A stretch of DNA of 64,000 bases, from positions 3,590,165 through 3,654,164 of the forward strand of contig CAJFCJ010000005.1 of the NCBI GenBank assembly GCA_904063045.1, given 5' to 3'. This stretch comes from Dimorphilus gyrociliatus. Taxonomy: Eukaryota > Animalia > Annelida. Shown one piece after another: positions 23,620 to 55,700 of the stretch (within the stretch, counting starts at the first letter, position 1; each line of letters opens with the position of its first letter). The position numbers were made by a program, and so were the translations under genes. The notes below the pieces were generated by a model. That model was not told the origin of the DNA. It worked only from the letters and a program-made list of their open reading frames with translations, and made no database searches.

Positions 23620-24329
23620 ACAATTCGTTTTGTTTGTTATTATTATTTTTTTTCATAATTTCAGTATCAATAACATTTTATGTTTTTTTTTTCTTTTCTT
23701 CCAAAGAAAAAAGGTTCTCTCTTCTAAAATTAACAAATTTGTGACATCAATTTACACACACAAAAAAAAGGTGAATACAAAGAAATAGTATAAAAAAAAA
23801 ACAACGTATAAATATAAAAAGACGATAATGTATATGCAATATTTACACACTATAATTCATGCTGTGTATGCATGCATGAACATCTCTTCTTGTTTTGTTT
23901 TTTTTAACATATAAAAGACATGTATATAGATAGATTTTAAAATAAAAAGTAATAAAAAATGAAGACTAGGCTAAGAAATTTCCATTTTTCAGAAAATCGA
24001 ACATAGTATTTAGCACCATTTTTGCGAAAACAATCCTTTATAATTTTTAACTTAATTATTTTTTTCCTTATCTCCTCCAAAAGAAAAAAATTTCATGCAG
24101 GTTTTCTAACGCAAATTGATTATTCGTTTGTTGATCAGCATTCATTGAAAAAAAAAACTTTCCTTTCCTTTAGTATATGTGTTTATATAAGTATTTAAAA
24201 AAATAAAAACAGCACCAAATTGCCTGTTTTAGCTTATTTTTGAAGTTGTTTCTTTTTGTTTAAGCAAACAAAAGCTTTTTCATACAAAACAAAAAAAAAA
24301 GGTAATATTGTTGAGCACATTTTAATTTC

Positions 24330-27300
24330 TTACACCTGGGTTTGCTTTGCTGCTGGCAATAACGCTAGATCTGAACGACCTTCGTCGTCGTTATCTTCGT
24401 CAGATAATTGGCTTATACGCTGATCATTATCATTATTATCATCATCACTTACTGCTAAACCATCCGTTGAAACATAGTCGTCGTAGGTTAACGGAGCCAT
24501 CGGTTTTATAGGAAAACCATATTGGAGATCGTCCGAATTCAGCATATCGGTACGAACTTTTAAATCTAAGGTCATATTACGAAATTCATCATCTAAATCA
24601 TCGTCTGTGTCACCCAAAAGTGATTCATCGCAGGCAAAATGACCTTCGGCAAAGCCGCCATCCGTCGCGTAATCATCATCGGTTATCTTATGTTGAAGGA
24701 TTGATCCTTTAGGAGACGGCGGACACGAATCAGGAACAACGCTACCTGATATCTATAAAAGAGTTCAACACGTTATTAGAATATAACTAAATATAAGTAG
24801 CTCTCGTACCTGAGTAATTTGTGGTAAAGGATCCCTAGATCTCGCCCAATCAGAAGTATCCCACGCATAGGCTAAAATCAATTTAACAATTATTAAAATA
24901 TTTTAATATAGTTTAGCGATCATGTGAATGATATTAAAAAGATGCCAAAGATAAATATTTAAATATATGTGAATAAGGGAGAATAAAAGCAAAATATAAT
25001 GAATTTTTAATATTAAAATCGTCTAAACCTAGATAATAAGAAAAGCCAAACTGATGAGGATAAATAAACTAGTCTTACTTAAATAAACTGATATATATAT
25101 TAATATATATGTCAAAAAAGAAATAAATAAGTAGCTATTTAAATAAATCAGCCATGCCGAATTGTAAAAGAATAAGGATAAATGTAAATAAGAGTTAGTA
25201 TTTAAAAAACATTCATTAAAAAGGCCAGGGGGGAAAGGGAGGAAGGTAGGGAGGGAGGGAGGGGTGCGTGATAGTGTAGAATTTGCTCTCTTTATTTTGA
25301 TATTTGTAATAGCTGTTGTTCATTTTTTTTTGGCATGCCTTTCTTACAAACGTATTGTACCTTTATTAGTAGTTGGTACTTTGAAATAGTTTCCTGAAGG
25401 TGCATTGATAAAAAAAGAATTGTTTTGTATGATTAAATTCGTCGTTTATCGAATTGAATATACAAAAAAGAAAGAACTAAACAAACACAAAAAGTAGTTC
25501 CCTTTTGTTCAATTTGTTCTCTCTCTCTTTTTTTTTTAAACGTATTTTAAACTGTTTATAATTTATGAAAACAAAACAAAAAGATACAATAACAATTGGT
25601 TAATGACTTACTTGGTCCTTCAGATTGAACGTCGAATGAACTTTGTCCTCCTGACGATGATAATTCCTTGTTCTGAGCCTTCTTCATGTTCTCATCGTCG
25701 AATGAGATGTTCAAATTGTTCTTATCGACTATCGGATAAGTACCTTTCGCCTGTAATCCCCTGGGCCTCTTTGAGTTACGTTCCTCTATTGCATCGTTAG
25801 AATAATTATTCGCTCGTTCTACCACCCCTAAGGCGTTGGGTACTAGAGTTGAGCCAACGTCTGATGGAGTATAAGACGAAGGCCTTTGTGGAATAGGGGG
25901 AGGTTGGTGGCACACAGTTAATTCTAGGTGATCACATTTGGCAGGATCTAAATCTTCACCAACTTTATTATAAGTGCAACTGCCATTCATCAATTCTCGT
26001 CTTTCACGGGCTTTCGTTTTTCTCTTTTTAATTAGACAGACGAGAGATAAGGCAAAAAGTATGAGGATAATGATAATACCACAGGCAATCAAGACTTGCC
26101 AAATTCTAAATTCGCCCTTTGCCGATATAACATCTGAAATGACTTTTTCGCAAGCCCGCCCAGTGGTATTTGGGGGACATAAGCATTTATAATTACTCTC
26201 CTCCGGTATGGGTTTGCAAATGCCACCGTTAGAACAGTACGACGATTGACAAAGACTCGCTGAAGATATTCCGCAACCCGCTTGAACATTCGAGAACATT
26301 GCTATACTGGGATGTAGAGGTTGGGAATTCATTACAATATGTCGAAGGCAACCCTCAAAACCCGATTTTACTGTGCCTCGTCGTAATTGAGCGCCGAATA
26401 TAATTGTTTCGGCTTCGAGGTTTACGTCATTCCTTAATACCCCAGCTTTTCCTCTAGATTTATATTTGTTATCGATAATAATCTCGGCGGAACAATCTTG
26501 ATTTCTCCTTACAATAACACTATGCCACCATCCGTCACTAATAGGCTGCTGCTGTATTCTAATAATATTTCTACCGCTTCCACAATCCCAACGATATTGT
26601 ATACAACCATCGGATATTTCAATAATACTAGAATAAAGCTTTGTACCGGAAGTATGCATTATCGGTCCTTTTGTTGCCAGAGTTCGTAATTCTAAAGATA
26701 GAATCATTTCTTGTTCAATAGACTTAGCAACCTTCCATTCGACGTAACTGTTTCCGGTGAAAGATAAAACTTGTTCTGTAAGGAGAAAATAAAAGAGATT
26801 AAAGTTAAACTTTGCCCTGAGCAATAATAGTTAAATTTTTAAATAGAAGGAATAACGAACCTTCATCTTGATCTTTAACACCCTGACAATTAAATCCTTG
26901 CGGGCACACACAAGAATATTCTCCATCAATTTTTTTACATTCTTCCGGTGCTCTGCATTTTATACACTCTCTTGCGTCCTCTTTACAAGATGGTCCACGA
27001 AAACCGATTGGACAATCGCATTTCGATACCATCTTTAAGCCTGGTGAAACGAAACTTTCTTGTTCTGTTATATACCGATTCAATTGAGGTGCAATTTCAA
27101 CTTCAGTTAGGCATTTATAAGGTTCGCATTTGGCTTTTTTGCATTCGTCTATCTTAATATTAACGATCCTTAAATTTCTGGAATCTCTTTCAATTTGAGC
27201 TTTAAAATTTAATAGATTCTCTCTAAGAATAACATTATTAACGTATCTTTCATCAGGCCTTATTGAATTTTTATCCGAGTGTTTAACAGCCAAAAACAAT

Positions 27301-30300
27301 AGCAAATCCGTGGGAACTGATCTTCTTTTTCTCTTTTCAATCACTTCCTCATCAAGAATAACATGATGAGCTTCCTCCATTCCCAATAATAATAATTGTT
27401 TATTAGATTCCGGTGGAGCAACAATACTGCTGACAACTTTCATAAAAGTTTCCTTATATTTGGCGTGGAGGAAATCGCTTGGAAGCATATCGCTTATATG
27501 TACAATAACAGAATTTTTAACGGCTTTTCTGGATATTTTCTTTACATTTATATAAACCATTGAATAGCTGACGTGTTTTGTGTCAGCAACACTTGTGTTT
27601 ACGGCGTATTCTCCCGGATCTAAAGGTTTCAAGGAGTGTAGAGTTCCGTCCTCAATGTCAACTTTAAAATACTTATTGTACGAATGAATAGAGAATCTCA
27701 GCATATTAGCGTCATATGGATCTTTATCATAAGCTCTTAATCGTCCCACTGGGCCAGGTTGAGCAGTCTCTCCAGATATTCTTAAAGTAGCGTTGAAGCC
27801 ATACAATTTTGGAGGATTTCGCCCTTCTTTTACAACCTTAACATTGACTATAGCCGTTGAATGTAAATTCCCTTGATCAAACGCTTTCACCTTAAAGGAA
27901 AATTGTTCATGAGGACGAAAGATGTCGGTAGTTGTTATCCAGCCAGTTTTAGAATCTACACGAAACTTTTTCTCACCACCATATAAAAGGCTGTAACGGA
28001 AGGGGCCAGCATGTCCTTCTCCATCGGGATCAGTTGCCGATACTTTAACAATACTATAGCCAACTTCGCTGCTTTCCTATTGAATGAAACGAGTGGATTA
28101 AGCTCTATTCATCTTATAAAAACAACAAGCACTTAATTAAAGAAATAACTTAAAAAAGGACCAAAATAATTAATTAAATAATAATAATAAACATGCTAGA
28201 AATACACGGATGTGGATTGTTTGGTGTTTTACCCTAAAAAAAAATAATTAAAGGATTAAGGTGCGACGTTAAACTCACAATAGACGGTAATCCGCCTTCA
28301 TTAACCTTATTGTAGCACGTTTCAATGGTTAGTAAAGGATATTCGATTAGTTTATTAATGTTATTTCGTAACAGGAAAAGTTTAACTTGAGAAAGCTGAT
28401 AAGAATCTTACCTGGACAACAGTTTCATATATACTCTTTGTAAATGTAGGGGTGTTATCATTTATATCATCGACAACTATTTGAACGGAAATTGTAGAAG
28501 ATAAACGAGGTTTCCCAAAGTCTTTCGCTTCAACTTTCAGATCGTATTGCGTGACCTTTTCTCTATCGATAACCTCGACTGCTTTCAATTCGCCAGACCG
28601 TTCGTCGATGATAAAATGGTGTTCAGGTTGACACTCTTTCAATGAATATTCAATTCTTCCATTATCCCCGCTGTCAATGTCCTTGGCACTTACTCTAAGT
28701 ATAGTCTTTCCCCTCGCCTCTTCCTCACGTACGTGCTTCTGAAATAGAAAATTAAATTCGTTCATTCAATCGTTATTGATGACTTGGCAAATTGAAAGCC
28801 TTACGATTATCGGAATATTAGTCCCAAAATATGGAGCATTATCGTTCTTATCAGTAACAATTATCTTTAGTTGAGTATTTGAACTTAAGGGCGGTACCCC
28901 AGAATCGACAGCCTGAATTAGTAAAGAGTATTCCTTCTGCTTCTCGTAATCTAATTCCTTAGATAATAAGATTGTACCCTCTTTGCGATCGATAGTAAAA
29001 ACTCCATCAGTATTTCCTCTGATAATTTCATAAGATAATTGAGCGTTAATTCCAACATCCAAACTAGTGGCTTGGATTTTAAGAACATTAGATTTTATTG
29101 GAAGATCTTCAGCCAATTCAATAGAGTATAGCTCTCTTTCCCATATCGGAGGATTATCGTTAACATCTAAAACGACCACGTTAACCGTTGCGTAGTTGGA
29201 ATGGGAATCAACCTAAATAATCAGATATGTTCAGATAAAAAAAAAAAGAAAACCATTGGATAAATTGAATTTGTTATTTCGCTTACATCGTCATTCGCTA
29301 CAACTTGAAATGTATATTTAGCTTTCTTTTCTCTATCAAGACTTTCTAATAGAGTTATTATACCCTTTTCTCTATCAATTGCAAATTTGTTACTCGAATC
29401 AGAAATTTGATAAGTTATCAGCTGGTTTGCATCTGCAAAAGAATTTATCGTTTAAATAATTTATTTCCGAAGAAAATAACCTAAATTAAGAAAGAAAAAT
29501 ACCTAAATCTGGGTCAAATGCCCATACTCGTCCTACTACTCCATTATTAATTCCTTCTCGAATTTGAAAGTTATAAGTATCTCTTTCGAATTTTGGAGGA
29601 TTATCATTGACATTCTTTATTTCGATTAATAATCGAGTTTCACAATATCTTCCACCAAAATCTTTAGCTTTGGCTGTTAAATTATAGTAAGGATGTACTT
29701 CATAATCGAGTTTAGCTTTGGTCACTATTTGTCCGTTCTTTGCTCCGATAGAAAAGTCATAATGTCTTTCGCCCGAAAGCGAATAAGATATTTGTCCATT
29801 CTTCTCTATGTCAGGATCGTGCGCTTTTATCGTATATACCATTGTATCAATATTTACATCTTCGTGAATTGCAGCATGAGCTTGTTTCTATAATACGTAA
29901 ACGAAAACATATTAGTTATGTTTATATAGCGTTTTTAAATTTGAAAACTCACCTCTTCGCATCTTGGATCATTGTCGTTAATGTCATTGACTTTAATTTT
30001 AACAGTTGCGGTCGTAGTGTACAAAGAGTCCGTGGCTAGAATTTCTAATGTGTACTCTGATGTTCTTTCACGATCTAATTCCTTGTTTATAGTTAACTTT
30101 CCACTTCTATCAAGTTTAAATTTAGACTCTTCATTACCCGAAAGAATGTAATGAGATACGCTTCCATCTTCATCTGTTTTTAGAAAATGGAAAACATCAT
30201 TCGAATTTCGCTCATATAAATGTTTATTTAAGAAGGGAGAAAAAGACGTTTTTCTACCTTTTCTACATACCTAAATCTACTGCTTGAAGTATTAACACTT

Positions 30301-52744: not shown

Positions 52745-55700
52745 ATGCTGAATTCTTTGCTGGCTAAGCTGTCTACTGCAATCGTTTTATTCCATTGTGT
52801 CTTATCAGTGACAAAAGGTAGGATATTTTCCTTTTTCGTGTCTAATCTAAATGTTTATATGTCGAAAGCGAAACAGACACGTAAGAGTTTGTAATACACA
52901 ATCATCGAGAAATAATAGGATTACATCAGCTCTTACACCAAATGTCGATTTTAGCCTCTTTTTTCTCTCTTTCTGCTAATGTTCACTTATACAAACGAAA
53001 ATATGCTTGCGTCTCGAGTATACATTCATTATCCCTTGTCAGATGTACTTTATAACGGAAGTTCGGTTCTAAAGCATTTCCTGTCCAGTTTGAAACTGTC
53101 TCACGCAAACCTCTGCAAAACTATTCCGTATTCATGAGGTATACCTGCACGACTACGGCGCCAGTTAGACGGCATTTAGCCTATATTTTTTACAATGATA
53201 CAATGTGTACGTAATGAAGCGTTTTTTATACATACAATATGCGTGCAATCAATGCAATAAACTGCAAATTACATTGAAATTTCTACGCAAAGACTATAAA
53301 TTTGCCCTATCTAATTAGTGCATAAAACGCTTTGTTTTGTTGAATTCCTCCCACTGTCTTCGGTTACAAAGTGTGCAATTTATATCTTTGATAGTCTTGA
53401 CAGTAGGCCAAACAGTTTATTTATTAGTATGAATTTTAGCAGCTATGAATAATTTGTGACGTATTAGTGCAGTAAATTTCAACTTTCTAGTCCCTATTCC
53501 AAACCTAATGCTCATAAGAGGAACGCCTATAGACTAAAAGACAAAAAGCAGGGAATTAGGCGGCGGTAGGTTCAAACGTTATTTTTTTACGCTGGAGACT
53601 AGCTCGTTAATGTTTTATATACTGTGTATATATATATGAATATACGTAAATGTATGCTATATATATATTCTGTATAAGCGTTGAAATAAAACATAACCGC
53701 TTATAATGTAAAGATAAATAAAGTATTCAACATAGACAAGGATTCCCTCAATTATCTTTATTATATTTTGAAATGCGAAAAAGTAAAGAGCATGGTCTAT
53801 TCTATTAATATAATATGTTTATAATACATGTACATACATGTATATTACCATATATAAATCTATCTATATATATATATATATATACATGTTGGAAGAAACG
53901 CTTAATGTTGCAGAACAGAGACTTATAGAGACGCTCTGTTAGCTCCTGTTAGGATAAAGCAAAAAAAAAAGCTGTATTAAAAAAAATTTTTTTTGAGGGA
54001 GGGGGAGGGAGGTGGAGGGGTGGTGGTAGGAGATTTACAAAAGAAAAAGAAAAAAGCTTTATAATCGCTTTTTATTTCTCTTTTCTCTTAAGTCTTCGAT
54101 TTGTCTTTATCTTTCTCATTTTTTTTTTAATTTTAGCAGACAAACTCAAGGATTTGTCTGTTGTAAAGCGAGTTTTTATTTTATATACAACTCCCGTTGG
54201 TAAAAAAAAAAAGCGCAACCCATTTGCGATGACATTAAATCGTAATTAGCGTAATGTCACTCGTTCCGAGAGATTCTTTCTATTCTGTCTCTTTCTTCGT
54301 CCCCTCCATTTTATCCGACTTCTATCCCTCCCTCCCGACCTTCTTAACAGTGGTAATTATTCAAAACTTTGCATTCGGATGACGGATCTGGTTTTTGTCT
54401 GATGCACGCGATTATTTTAATTAAAAGGGAAGTGTTTAAAAAAAAACAAGTTTCTTCGTGTTTTAATCTCTCCTTTCCCCGCCATCTTTACTACAGTCGG
54501 TTTGTTTGTCAAACTATATCGTTATTTTTGCACTTTACGTCTGTCATCTATTACTTAATTCCATTATATTTCGATGATTGCGTAATTTACATTACAGAAA
54601 TAATCAAGTTAATTCTTTGTCAGATATTGGAACCAGGCGGAAGTTGGTTGTAACAGCTGTAAAAGTAAGTAAGAATGATACATAGAAACTAATAAAAAGG
54701 GGAATTTTTAAGGGTTTTAAGGTTCTTTCGACCAATTGATTTTTTCTTAAGTTCTAATGCATTCCTTCCGGTCTATTCTCTTAACAGGAAGCACCTTATT
54801 TAGATACGACAACGTCGAACAGGACCTCAAGACGTTACGTAGGTTATATCCCGGAGTTGCTAGATCATTTAGCGGCTCGTTTAAAATTTGACTACGAAAT
54901 AAGACTGATAGACGAATACGGCTACTGCAAAAGGACGTCTAGCAGGGACAATTGCACGGTCGATAAGTGGAATGGTATGGTTAAAGAGATCCTTTATAAT
55001 GTGCGTATAAATTACTATAAAAAAATATAAATAAACGTACTCTATCTCCGATATCTATAAAAAAAAGGGTATCGATTAAAGATTACTGCTTAATTTTGCA
55101 GAAAGCCGACTTATCCGGACCGATGCTGATGACTAGAGAACGAGCAAAGTTTTTACAGTTCACGAGCGCCTTATTCTACGATACGGCTTCTGTTCTAATC
55201 CGCCGAGACGAAAGGGAAGATTATAACATTACACTAGCAACAGATTTATGGAAGAAGAGGAGATATTTAGCATTTGGTATTCTGAAATCAGGAGCTGAAA
55301 GTGTGTTCTTAAAGAGGCTATCAAGATCCAGTACGGCGTACAGAAGGTTATATAGCTATCTCAAAAAGCAAAGTCGAATGTGCACTTATTACAAAACGTG
55401 TCTAAGTAAAGTAATAACCGGTATAAGGACAAGGAGGAGGGGAAAAAGGATCGGATTCGCCTTCATACTTATCAGATCCAAAGCGGAATACGAAGCGTTT
55501 AACATAATTCGACGCTCGTTCGACAATAAGCCTCAATGCGATTTAACAGTTACTGATAGTTTCCTTTTTAAAATTCCAAGGGGACTTGCTGTAAGAAAAA
55601 ATGGGGAATTTTCGGAAAAAATTACTCAGGAAATAATTCAAATGGCAAAAGATGGCGTTCTTGCCAATTTATACGCTAGATGGTTCATTGGGTTAACCTG

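What the first reader, a model, noticed from the sequence alone, without database searches (positions are those of the whole stretch)
25361..25393. Candidate 33-nt microexon in the Fat cytoplasmic tail at the position of the vertebrate FAT1(+12) alternative exon
The intron between ...SEGP and the YAWDTSDW exon (25611-24872) contains a well-formed cassette. It has a strong acceptor with a TGC close to the AG, 33 nt in phase 1-1 encoding (R)NYFKVPTTNK(A), and a gtacaa donor. GCATG motifs follow ~25 and ~205 nt into the downstream intron (25334-25338, 25153-25157 on the minus strand). From recalled literature, vertebrate FAT1 has a 12-aa alternative exon immediately before its YHWDTSDW motif, SRRM3/4 (eMIC) microexons carry UGC near the 3' splice site, and RBFOX binds downstream GCAUG to promote inclusion. 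The inference is an ancient or convergent tissue-regulated splicing switch in Fat signalling in an invertebrate.
Basis: partly seen in the sequence, partly recalled or inferred. Interest (0 to 1): 0.75.

Follow-up and report, generated by a model that had tools for sequence, protein, structure and literature searches.

The report
Real alternative microexon in Fat1-like cadherin
A 33-base mini-exon in the tail of this marine worm's Fat1-like adhesion gene is really spliced into about a third of its messages, at the exact spot where vertebrate FAT1 has its known 12-residue optional exon and where several other animal phyla have one too, so this splicing switch probably dates back to early bilaterian animals.

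Summary
The 33-nt cassette (25393-25361, minus strand) has AG/GT borders, phase 1-1 and an open frame. Spliced RNA contigs hold both forms: exon A joined straight to the YAWDTSDW exon, and exon A-microexon-YAWDTSDW exon. Both occur in a 100%-identical transcriptome (depth 353 skipped, 158 included) and in an unrelated coral metatranscriptome (3.95 and 2). It is therefore a real alternative exon, included in roughly a third of transcripts.

The gene is a Fat1/Fat-like (kugelei-type) cadherin, not Fat/Fat4. Rodent and fish FAT1 isoforms carry their +12 insert at the same place, just before GYHWDTSDW. So do annotated isoforms of a crinoid (+11), a hemichordate (+6), nemerteans and many molluscs. 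DNA from three of these species shows separate phase 1-1 microexons with weak donors in the same intron.

An ancient bilaterian origin is therefore more likely than convergence, but it is not proven. RBFOX control is plausible: two GCAUG lie within 204 nt downstream against 0.09 expected, and the rat Fat1 exon is RBFOX2-dependent. Neural or eMIC control is untested, and mouse FAT1(+12) is a non-neural isoform. I found no paper describing the exon outside vertebrates.

The parts
25612..26775 (-). Exon A of the Fat1-like cadherin: last laminin-G domain, EGF, transmembrane helix and proximal cytoplasmic tail. It ends ...QSSFDVQSEGP plus one base (A), and its donor is a strong gtaagt.
   Evidence: Spliced contigs of X7 and X3 cover 25612-26775 and join to 26861. 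Pfam finds Laminin_G and EGF.
25394..25611 (-). Upstream intron (218 nt) with a polypyrimidine run and the acceptor ...tcaaTGCaccttcag.
   Evidence: Joint 25393/25612 in X7 and X1; sequence.
25402..25404 (-). The only UGC in the last 40 nt before the microexon, 11 nt upstream of it.
   Evidence: 1 seen in -40..-4 against 0.32 expected, which is weak on its own.
25361..25393 (-). 33-nt alternative cassette microexon, phase 1-1. Inclusion turns ...SEGP-T-YAWDTSDW into ...SEGP-RNYFKVPTTNKA-YAWDTSDW. Its donor is a weak gtacaa.
   Evidence: A 91-nt contig in X7 (depth 158.4) and a contig in X1 (depth 2) carry it between exon A and exon B. The skipping joint is also present in X7 (352.7), X1 (3.95) and X3 (72.4).
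24872..25360 (-). Downstream intron (489 nt).
   Evidence: Joint 24871/25361. A low-depth unspliced contig covers 24844-25193 in X7 (depth 9.1).
25334..25338 (-). GCAUG 23 nt downstream of the microexon donor (candidate RBFOX site).
25153..25157 (-). Second GCAUG, 204 nt downstream of the microexon.
   Evidence: 2 in the first 300 nt against 0.09 expected from the density on the gene strand.
24810..24871 (-). Exon B (62 nt), encoding (T/A)YAWDTSDWARSRDPLPQITQ. This is the conserved YxWDxSDW motif of Fat1/2/3 and Fat-like tails.
   Evidence: Contigs of X7, X3, X1 and X2. The motif is shared with all the Fat1-like proteins listed.
24330..24752 (-). Coding part of the last exon, an acidic tail ending ...KQTQV-stop (a PDZ-ligand-like end, as in Owenia ...HLHTQV). 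The 3' UTR runs on to at least 23800.
   Evidence: Joint 24752/24810 skips 57 nt, and X7 contig 17 covers 23800-24752. Translation is; the Owenia tail is.

Best explanation
The 33-nt segment is a genuine, frame-preserving cassette microexon of this worm's Fat1/Fat-like protocadherin. It is included in roughly a third of transcripts in whole-sample RNA. It lies in the phase-1 intron that splits the conserved tail motif just before Y-x-W-D-x-S-D-W. This is the same intron, in the same phase, that holds the 36-nt FAT1(+12) exon of vertebrates and short optional exons in a crinoid, a hemichordate, nemerteans and molluscs. It is therefore most likely the annelid copy of an ancestral bilaterian splicing switch.

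Shown: the exon exists, both isoforms exist, and position and phase match other phyla.

Inferred mechanism: inclusion puts 10 extra residues, three of them basic, between the acidic/serine-rich stretch (...SSFDVQSEGP) and the YAWDTSDW motif. This pulls apart a composite docking site. In mouse Fat3 and Fat1 the equivalent site is the DNxYH/Kif5-interaction, PTB-like motif. The likely result is a change in which partner binds and where the cadherin sits in the cell.

Inferred regulation: the weak donor makes inclusion depend on activators, and the two downstream GCAUG suggest RBFOX, as shown for rat Fat1.
For: RNA. One search gives inclusion joints 24871->25361 and 25393->25612 (X7 depth 158.4, X1 depth 2) and the skipping joint 24871->25612 (X7 352.7, X1 3.95, X3 72.4), all with GT..AG ends. 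The neighbouring introns, 57 and 85 nt, are also removed in the same contigs, so these are spliced RNAs.

Gene identity. One search finds cadherin, laminin-G and EGF domains. In some searches the best named relatives are 'protocadherin Fat 1-like' and 'fat-like cadherin-related tumor suppressor/kugelei'.

Same position elsewhere:
- Rodent FAT1 with or without ESLAAPDLSKPR.
- Catfish Fat1a with or without ESLPSHELKNPR (and a +32 form).
- Antedon with or without VIRGSQVIKIK.
- Glandiceps with or without APQQKK.
- Argopecten with or without AARRKKNK.
- Inserts in Tubulanus, Lineus, Haliotis, Physella, Biomphalaria, Babylonia, Mytilus, Saccostrea and Ruditapes.
All lie directly before (G/D)YHWDxSDW.

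Phase. The first inserted residue always has a G-initial codon (A, V or E) and Gly or Asp is restored after the insert. Genomic DNA shows separate AG..GT exons of 24, 18 and 36 nt in phase 1-1, each with a donor lacking G at +5.

Function in vertebrates. The insert disrupts the DNxYH/Kif5-ID and changes localisation (PMC5082931, PMC8865054, PMC10297709).

Regulation. One search finds 2 GCATG in the 300 nt downstream against 0.09 expected. Summed over the four species the count is 5 against 0.91. The rat Fat1 36-nt exon is co-activated by RBPMS, RBFOX2, MBNL and QK (PMC12721327).
Against: - The inserted peptides share almost no sequence between phyla apart from a terminal K or R. That residue is partly forced by the ...AAAG|GT donor, so homology rests on position, phase and optional use.
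- Insect models, the two annelid gene models found (Owenia, Capitella) and one amphioxus isoform show no insert. This could mean loss, missing annotation or independent gains.
- The strict vertebrate Kif5-ID pattern Qx(2,3)SxQx(4)Dx(3)Y is not met by the worm tail.
- A ~91%-identical relative (X3) shows only the skipped form, although contigs drop minor variants.
- Contig depths are a crude measure of inclusion.
- No tissue-resolved data exist.
- The motif statistics are post hoc. Tubulanus has no GCAUG within 300 nt.
Confidence: 0.72

Rival explanations
1. Convergent exonisation. The phase-1 intron before YxWDxSDW is ancient, but short optional exons arose in it independently in several lineages, including this worm, because the intron is a tolerant 'hotspot' inside a disordered tail.
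For: Insert lengths (15 to about 63 nt) and sequences differ widely between phyla. Ambulacrarians and vertebrates also carry other, larger optional exons in the same intron, so it does accept new exons. Torres-Mendez et al. favour convergence for most exons at equivalent fly and mammal positions (PMC8797185). Owenia, Capitella and insect models lack an insert.
Against: The same phase, the same immediate adjacency to the motif, optional use, a weak donor and a basic C-terminal end recur in at least six phyla on both sides of the protostome-deuterostome split. Within Spiralia the inserts are recognisably alike (A-x-K/R-rich-K). Repeated independent gain of such similar exons is less parsimonious than one origin followed by losses.
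Confidence: 0.22
2. Neuron-specific eMIC (Srrm234)-dependent microexon. In this reading, inclusion is restricted to neurons through the UGC next to the acceptor.
For: The size (33 nt), the UGC 11 nt before the exon and a long pyrimidine run fit the eMIC code described for flies and mammals (PMC8797185). A UGC within 40 nt of the acceptor is also present in the three other species examined: 6 in total against 1.6 expected.
Against: One UGC is close to chance (0.32 expected). Inclusion of about 30% in whole-sample RNA of a tiny animal is high for a neuron-only exon, though not impossible. Mouse FAT1(+12) is the isoform of kidney, liver, lung and ileum rather than brain (PMC10297709). In rat smooth muscle it depends on RBPMS, RBFOX2, MBNL and QK (PMC12721327). 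No tissue data exist for the worm.
Confidence: 0.2
3. Splicing noise. A cryptic exon is used at a low, functionless level because the intron happens to hold good splice sites.
For: The intron is AT-rich, and AG/GT pairs with open frames are common. The peptide has no recognisable motif. The relative's contig (X3) shows only skipping.
Against: The included form reaches about 45% of the depth of the skipped form in two independent studies. The exon preserves the frame. It lies exactly where other phyla have an optional exon. Its host intron is 740 nt, whereas the two neighbouring introns are 57 and 85 nt, so the extra sequence has been kept.
Confidence: 0.04

Closest known systems
Vertebrate FAT1(+12) alternative exon (36-nt penultimate exon; Braun et al. 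2007, as cited in PMC5082931, PMC10297709 and PMC12721327)
   Same: It is an optional, frame-preserving short exon in phase 1-1, inserted directly before (G)YHWDTSDW in the cytoplasmic tail of the orthologous cadherin subfamily. It has a weak donor, UGC near the acceptor and GCAUG downstream (catfish locus). Both isoforms are co-expressed.
   Different: It is 33 nt rather than 36 nt, and the peptides are unrelated (RNYFKVPTTNK against ESLAAPDLSKPR). The worm's split codon starts with A, giving Thr when skipped and Arg...Ala when included; vertebrates have G, giving Gly when skipped and Glu...Gly when included. The worm tail does not match the strict Kif5-ID/DNxYH pattern. Function and regulation in the worm are untested.
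Mouse Fat3 exons 24.1 and 24.2 (+32) that disrupt the Kif5-interaction domain (PMC5082931, PMC8865054)
   Same: Same intron, and the same idea: splitting a docking motif that spans the exon junction, with a developmental isoform switch.
   Different: In Fat3 two obligate exons (56 + 40 nt) add 32 residues. The worm has a single 33-nt exon, and no second exon was seen in the RNA contigs.
Annotated Fat 1-like isoforms of invertebrates (RefSeq models of Antedon, Glandiceps, Argopecten, Haliotis, Tubulanus and others)
   Same: Short optional inserts at the identical junction and phase. Spiralian inserts start with Ala and end with Lys, and the worm's ends ...TNK.
   Different: Mollusc and nemertean inserts are strongly K/R-rich and 5-12 residues long (Lineus 21). 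The worm's is 11 residues and only mildly basic. These isoforms exist only as automatic annotations; I found no paper discussing them.
eMIC/SRRM3-4-dependent neuronal microexons (PMC8797185)
   Same: Size class, UGC close to the 3' splice site and a pyrimidine-rich acceptor region.
   Different: Neural restriction and eMIC dependence are untested here. The vertebrate counterpart exon is not a neural-specific isoform.

Membership tests
Fat1/2/3 - Fat-like (kugelei) cadherin subfamily | Very many cadherin repeats followed by laminin-G and EGF modules and one transmembrane helix | tested here: met
   Pfam finds 8 cadherin stretches in one 1119-aa exon, 4 in another, and Laminin_G plus EGF in exon A.
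Fat1/2/3 - Fat-like (kugelei) cadherin subfamily | Cytoplasmic YxWDxSDW motif followed by ...LPxITE-like sequence (absent from Fat/Fat4) | tested here: met
   YAWDTSDWARSRDPLPQITQ is in exon B. The same motif is in all Fat1, Fat3 and fat-like proteins listed. PMC11269957 names YHWDxSDW as the motif shared by Fat1 and Drosophila Fat2.
Fat1/2/3 - Fat-like (kugelei) cadherin subfamily | Best named relatives belong to that subfamily | tested here: met
   The full-length hits to exon A that were looked up are named protocadherin Fat 1-like, Fat 1a, Fat 3 or fat-like cadherin-related tumor suppressor homolog. Tail searches seeded with two of those relatives give the same names. No formal tree was built.
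FAT1(+12)-type alternative tail exon | Lies in the intron immediately before (G)YHWDxSDW | tested here: met
   Worm junctions come from RNA. Rodent and teleost isoform pairs differ by 12 residues at that point. The catfish exon is mapped at L003 76166-76201.
FAT1(+12)-type alternative tail exon | Short, symmetric (phase 1-1), frame-preserving cassette | tested here: met
   The worm exon is 33 nt in phase 1-1. The 36-, 24- and 18-nt exons of catfish, Tubulanus and Glandiceps are in the same phase.
FAT1(+12)-type alternative tail exon | Optional: included and skipped mRNAs coexist | tested here: met
   Both joints occur in X7 (158.4 against 352.7) and in X1 (2 against 3.95).
FAT1(+12)-type alternative tail exon | Inclusion changes partner binding or subcellular localisation of the cadherin | not testable with these tools
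   Known only for vertebrate Fat1 and Fat3 (PMC5082931, PMC10297709). The worm tail keeps the Tyr and the acidic stretch but not the strict Kif5-ID pattern.
FAT1(+12)-type alternative tail exon | Common descent with the vertebrate exon | tested here: inconclusive
   Position, phase, optional use and a weak donor are shared across at least six phyla. There is no peptide similarity between phyla, and the exon is absent from insect, Owenia and Capitella models.
RBFOX-activated cassette exon | (U)GCAUG within about 300 nt downstream of the exon | tested here: met
   GCAUG at +23 and +204; 2 seen against 0.09 expected. On the minus strand of the whole 64-kb window there are only 22.
RBFOX-activated cassette exon | Inclusion depends on an Rbfox protein | not testable with these tools
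   Shown only for the rat Fat1 exon (PMC12721327).
eMIC (Srrm234/SRRM3-4)-dependent neural microexon | UGC close to the 3' splice site of a very short exon | tested here: inconclusive
   One UGC at -11 against 0.32 expected by chance.
eMIC (Srrm234/SRRM3-4)-dependent neural microexon | Neuron-restricted inclusion that depends on the eMIC domain | not testable with these tools
   Only whole-sample contigs were available.

The most novel reading that the evidence does not exclude
The optional microexon before YxWDxSDW is one ancestral exon, more than 500 million years old. On this reading it has been kept as an RBFOX-tuned switch in Fat1-like cadherins from annelids and molluscs to echinoderms and mammals. 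It toggles a composite motor/adaptor docking site and hence the polarised placement of the cadherin. That would make it one of the very few alternative microexons conserved across Bilateria.
Probability: 0.35. Interest if true: 0.78.

Novelty: new member of a known kind. Interest (0 to 1): 0.62.

Why it matters
Alternative microexons shared between phyla are rare. A systematic fly-mouse comparison found only four eMIC exons at equivalent positions and judged most of them convergent (PMC8797185). Here an optional microexon with direct RNA support in an annelid sits at the exact junction of the functionally studied FAT1(+12) and Fat3(+32) switch, and annotated isoforms of echinoderms, hemichordates, molluscs and nemerteans show the same thing.

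If the exon is ancestral, the isoform switch that decides whether Fat1/Fat3 goes to leading edges and neurite tips or to cell contacts is an old part of Fat-like cadherin biology. It could then be dissected in small, tractable invertebrates. It would also give a concrete test case for deep conservation of RBFOX-dependent splicing.

Tried and rejected
- **Word-index protein search with exon A.** It returned only one hit, a genomic contig of a relative with 87% amino-acid identity that reads into the intron after SEGP. Its DNA could not be fetched because the file is too large, so the intron could not be compared with a close relative.
- **Degenerate-codon pattern of the microexon against JGI metagenome contigs.** No match.
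- **DNA for other species.** The Owenia model and the Antedon isoform with the insert are not on record. Antedon X1 is over the tool's length limit. The Pecten and Ruditapes genes are longer than 100 kb, so no DNA was returned. An unannotated microexon in another annelid therefore could not be looked for.
- **Braun et al. 2007.** The paper is not held, so its content is cited second-hand from PMC5082931, PMC10297709 and PMC12721327.
- **tblastn of an annelid Fat1-like protein on the window, to survey intron sizes.** Cadherin-repeat cross-matches swamped it, so only the RNA-defined introns are used.
- **Run X2.** It adds nothing at the microexon. Its contig runs from exon B into the intron, so it is unspliced RNA or DNA.
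- **Joined model.** Exons were handled one by one, by reference.
- **Rejected: chance cassette.** The RNA evidence rules it out.
- **Rejected: constitutive exon.** The skipped form is the more abundant one.
- **Rejected: Fat/Fat4 identity.** The tail motif and the named relatives are Fat1/Fat-like.
Full report
**Observation**

On the minus strand, exon A ends ...TCT GAA GGA CCA A at 25612, followed by gtaagt. After 218 nt comes the acceptor ...tcaatgcaccttcag. A 33-nt open segment follows (25393-25361), then the donor gtacaa. After another 489 nt the next exon begins at 24871 with CC TAT GCG TGG GAT ACT TCT GAT TGG.

The frame is phase 1-1:
- Skipped: ...SEGP-T-YAWDTSDW.
- Included: ...SEGP-R-NYFKVPTTNK-A-YAWDTSDW.

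Every sequence statement in the finding is correct.

**RNA evidence**

I found public runs that hold this stretch and laid four of them on 23800-27900.

- **Run X7** is 100% identical to the window. Its contigs lack the 57-nt (24753-24809) and 85-nt (26776-26860) introns, so they come from spliced RNA. It holds the skipping joint 24871->25612 (depth 352.7). It also holds a 91-nt contig made of 28 nt of exon B, the 33-nt segment and 30 nt of exon A (depth 158.4). All borders are GT..AG.
- A 32-nt node at depth 177.5 and an unspliced contig at depth 9.1 fit the expected branching of the assembly graph around such a cassette.
- **Run X1**, an unrelated coral metatranscriptome at 99% identity or more, also holds both forms (3.95 skipped, 2 included).
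- **Run X3**, a relative about 91% identical, shows only the skipped form in a 6.1-kb contig. Contigs drop minor variants, so this decides nothing.

The segment is therefore a real, alternatively used exon. Judged by the depths of the two graph branches, it is included in about a third of transcripts in both studies. That figure is a rough proxy, not a measurement.

**The gene**

The surrounding minus-strand exons encode many cadherin repeats, a laminin-G domain, an EGF domain, one transmembrane helix and an acidic tail ending ...KQTQV.

The word-index search with exon A found only a genomic contig of a close relative. I therefore used the exhaustive HMMER search. The full-length hits that were looked up are named protocadherin Fat 1-like, Fat 1a, Fat 3 or fat-like cadherin-related tumor suppressor homolog, and tail searches seeded with the Tubulanus and Owenia relatives gave the same names.

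The YxWDxSDW motif is the hallmark of the Fat1/3 and Drosophila Fat2 (kugelei) tails (PMC11269957). So the gene belongs to the Fat1/Fat-like subfamily, not Fat/Fat4.

**Position relative to vertebrate FAT1(+12)**

Isoform pairs of rodent FAT1 differ by ESLAAPDLSKPR, inserted between ...SESCDDN and GYHWDTSDW. Examples are Phodopus (4351 and 4363 residues) and models from Meriones, Microtus and Cricetulus. Teleost Fat1a differs by ESLPSHELKNPR or similar at the same point, and a +32 form adds 20 more residues in front.

In the catfish locus the insert is a separate 36-nt exon (L003 76166-76201), AG..GT, in phase 1-1.

The literature agrees:
- Fat1 and Fat3 are alternatively spliced between the exons that together encode the DNxYH motif. 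The insert disrupts a Kif5B-interaction domain and changes localisation (PMC5082931, PMC8865054).
- The 36-nt penultimate Fat1 exon disrupts a PTB-like motif (PMC12721327).

**Other phyla**

Annotated isoforms show optional inserts at exactly this junction:

| Taxon | Insert |
|---|---|
| Antedon (crinoid) | +/- VIRGSQVIKIK |
| Glandiceps (hemichordate) | +/- APQQKK |
| Argopecten (scallop) | +/- AARRKKNK, plus a one-residue-shorter variant |
| Tubulanus, Lineus (nemerteans) | insert present |
| Haliotis asinina, Physella, Biomphalaria, Babylonia, Mytilus, Saccostrea, Ruditapes, Dreissena | insert present |
| Octopus | insert present |
| Limulus | possibly |

Close relatives, or other isoforms of the same species, lack the insert: Haliotis rufescens, Lymnaea, Bulinus, Ostrea and Argonauta.

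In every case the first inserted residue has a G-initial codon (Ala, Val or Glu) and Gly or Asp is restored after the insert. That is the signature of a phase-1 cassette behind an exon ending in G. The worm differs only in having A there, giving Thr when skipped and Arg...Ala when included.

Genomic DNA confirms separate phase 1-1 exons of 24 nt (Tubulanus, L001 50779-50802) and 18 nt (Glandiceps, L002 55024-55041).

All four microexons examined end ...A(A/G)AG|gt and have donors without G at +5. Three of the four upstream constitutive donors have that G.

In invertebrates the upstream exon ends ...(L/E/G)P, as in the worm (SEGP).

Insect models, one amphioxus isoform and the two annelid models found (Owenia, Capitella) show no insert. 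I could not fetch their DNA to look for an unannotated exon.

**Ancient or convergent**

Five features recur on both sides of the protostome-deuterostome split: position, phase, optional use, a weak donor and a basic C-terminal end. Spiralian inserts also resemble each other. I therefore favour a single origin with losses, at about 0.7.

Three caveats apply:
- Peptides are not alignable between phyla.
- The terminal Lys is partly dictated by the donor consensus.
- This intron also accepts other, larger optional exons, so it may be a hotspot. Examples are the vertebrate +20 exon and inserts of about 240-530 residues in Glandiceps and Antedon isoforms.

**Regulation**

GCATG is rare on the gene strand (0.29 per kb), yet two lie within 204 nt downstream of the exon: 0.09 expected, Poisson P about 0.004, a post hoc figure.

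Counts in the first 300 nt downstream in the other species:
- Glandiceps: 2 (0.30 expected).
- Catfish: 1 (0.32 expected).
- Tubulanus: 0 (0.20 expected).

The rat Fat1 exon is co-activated by RBPMS, RBFOX2, MBNL and QK (PMC12721327). RBFOX control is therefore a reasonable inference, at about 0.45.

The eMIC reading is weaker. One UGC at -11 is near chance. Mouse FAT1(+12) is the isoform of kidney, liver, lung and ileum, while brain uses +32 and +8TR (PMC10297709). No tissue-resolved data were available for the worm.

**Mechanism**

Shown: two mRNAs that differ by 33 nt in frame.

Inferred: the insert separates the acidic/serine stretch from the YAWDTSDW motif and adds three basic residues, changing a composite docking site as in Fat1 and Fat3. 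The worm tail does not meet the strict vertebrate Kif5-ID pattern, so the partner may differ.

The host intron is 740 nt, against 57 and 85 nt for its neighbours. This is consistent with the exon and its control sequences being retained.

**Novelty**

The kind of feature is known from vertebrates. This is a new, RNA-supported member in an annelid-like worm, and it comes with a much wider phyletic distribution.

In the papers I could search, I found that distribution only in automatic annotations. Braun et al. 2007 itself was not readable.

The scan had no other finding on this feature elsewhere.

**Limits**

- The species name was not given to me, and run names were coded.

Noticed in passing
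window 23858-24098 (minus strand): Three minus-strand GCATG lie within about 240 nt in the 3' UTR of the same Fat1-like gene (23858-23862, 23871-23875, 24094-24098). The whole 64-kb minus strand has only 22. These could be further RBFOX sites acting on the mRNA.
   Followed up: no
L002 about 54400-54613 (Glandiceps); P0154/P0079 against P0151/P0153; Antedon P0157/P0029 against P0158/P0160: In the hemichordate and the crinoid, the same intron also holds a large optional coding block. It adds about 240 and about 530 residues to the isoforms, upstream of the microexon. The intron therefore carries two independent optional units, as in vertebrate FAT1 (+20 and +12).
   Followed up: partly
P0184 against P0183/P0011 (Argopecten irradians isoforms): The scallop insert occurs as AARRKKNK and as ARRKKNK. 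The one-residue difference looks like tandem (NAGNAG-type) acceptor use at the microexon.
   Followed up: no
mollusc and nemertean Fat 1-like proteins (P0011, P0177, P0180, P0182, P0192, P0193, P0204, P0107): The spiralian inserts are almost pure Lys/Arg (for example AKRGKRK, ARRGKRK, ANRKKGKK), set right after an acidic SESEDD stretch. This charge flip could act as a basic patch or a nuclear-localisation-like signal in the released tail.
   Followed up: no
P0001 against window 25613-26773: In a relative with 87% overall identity in this exon, the transmembrane helix and cytoplasmic part are nearly unchanged, while the laminin-G/EGF part carries most of the substitutions. The tail is therefore under stronger constraint than the last extracellular modules.
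   Followed up: no
window 24330-24344; P0194 C-terminus: The worm protein ends ...KQTQV and the Owenia orthologue ends ...HLHTQV. This shared T-Q-V end looks like a class I PDZ ligand.
   Followed up: no
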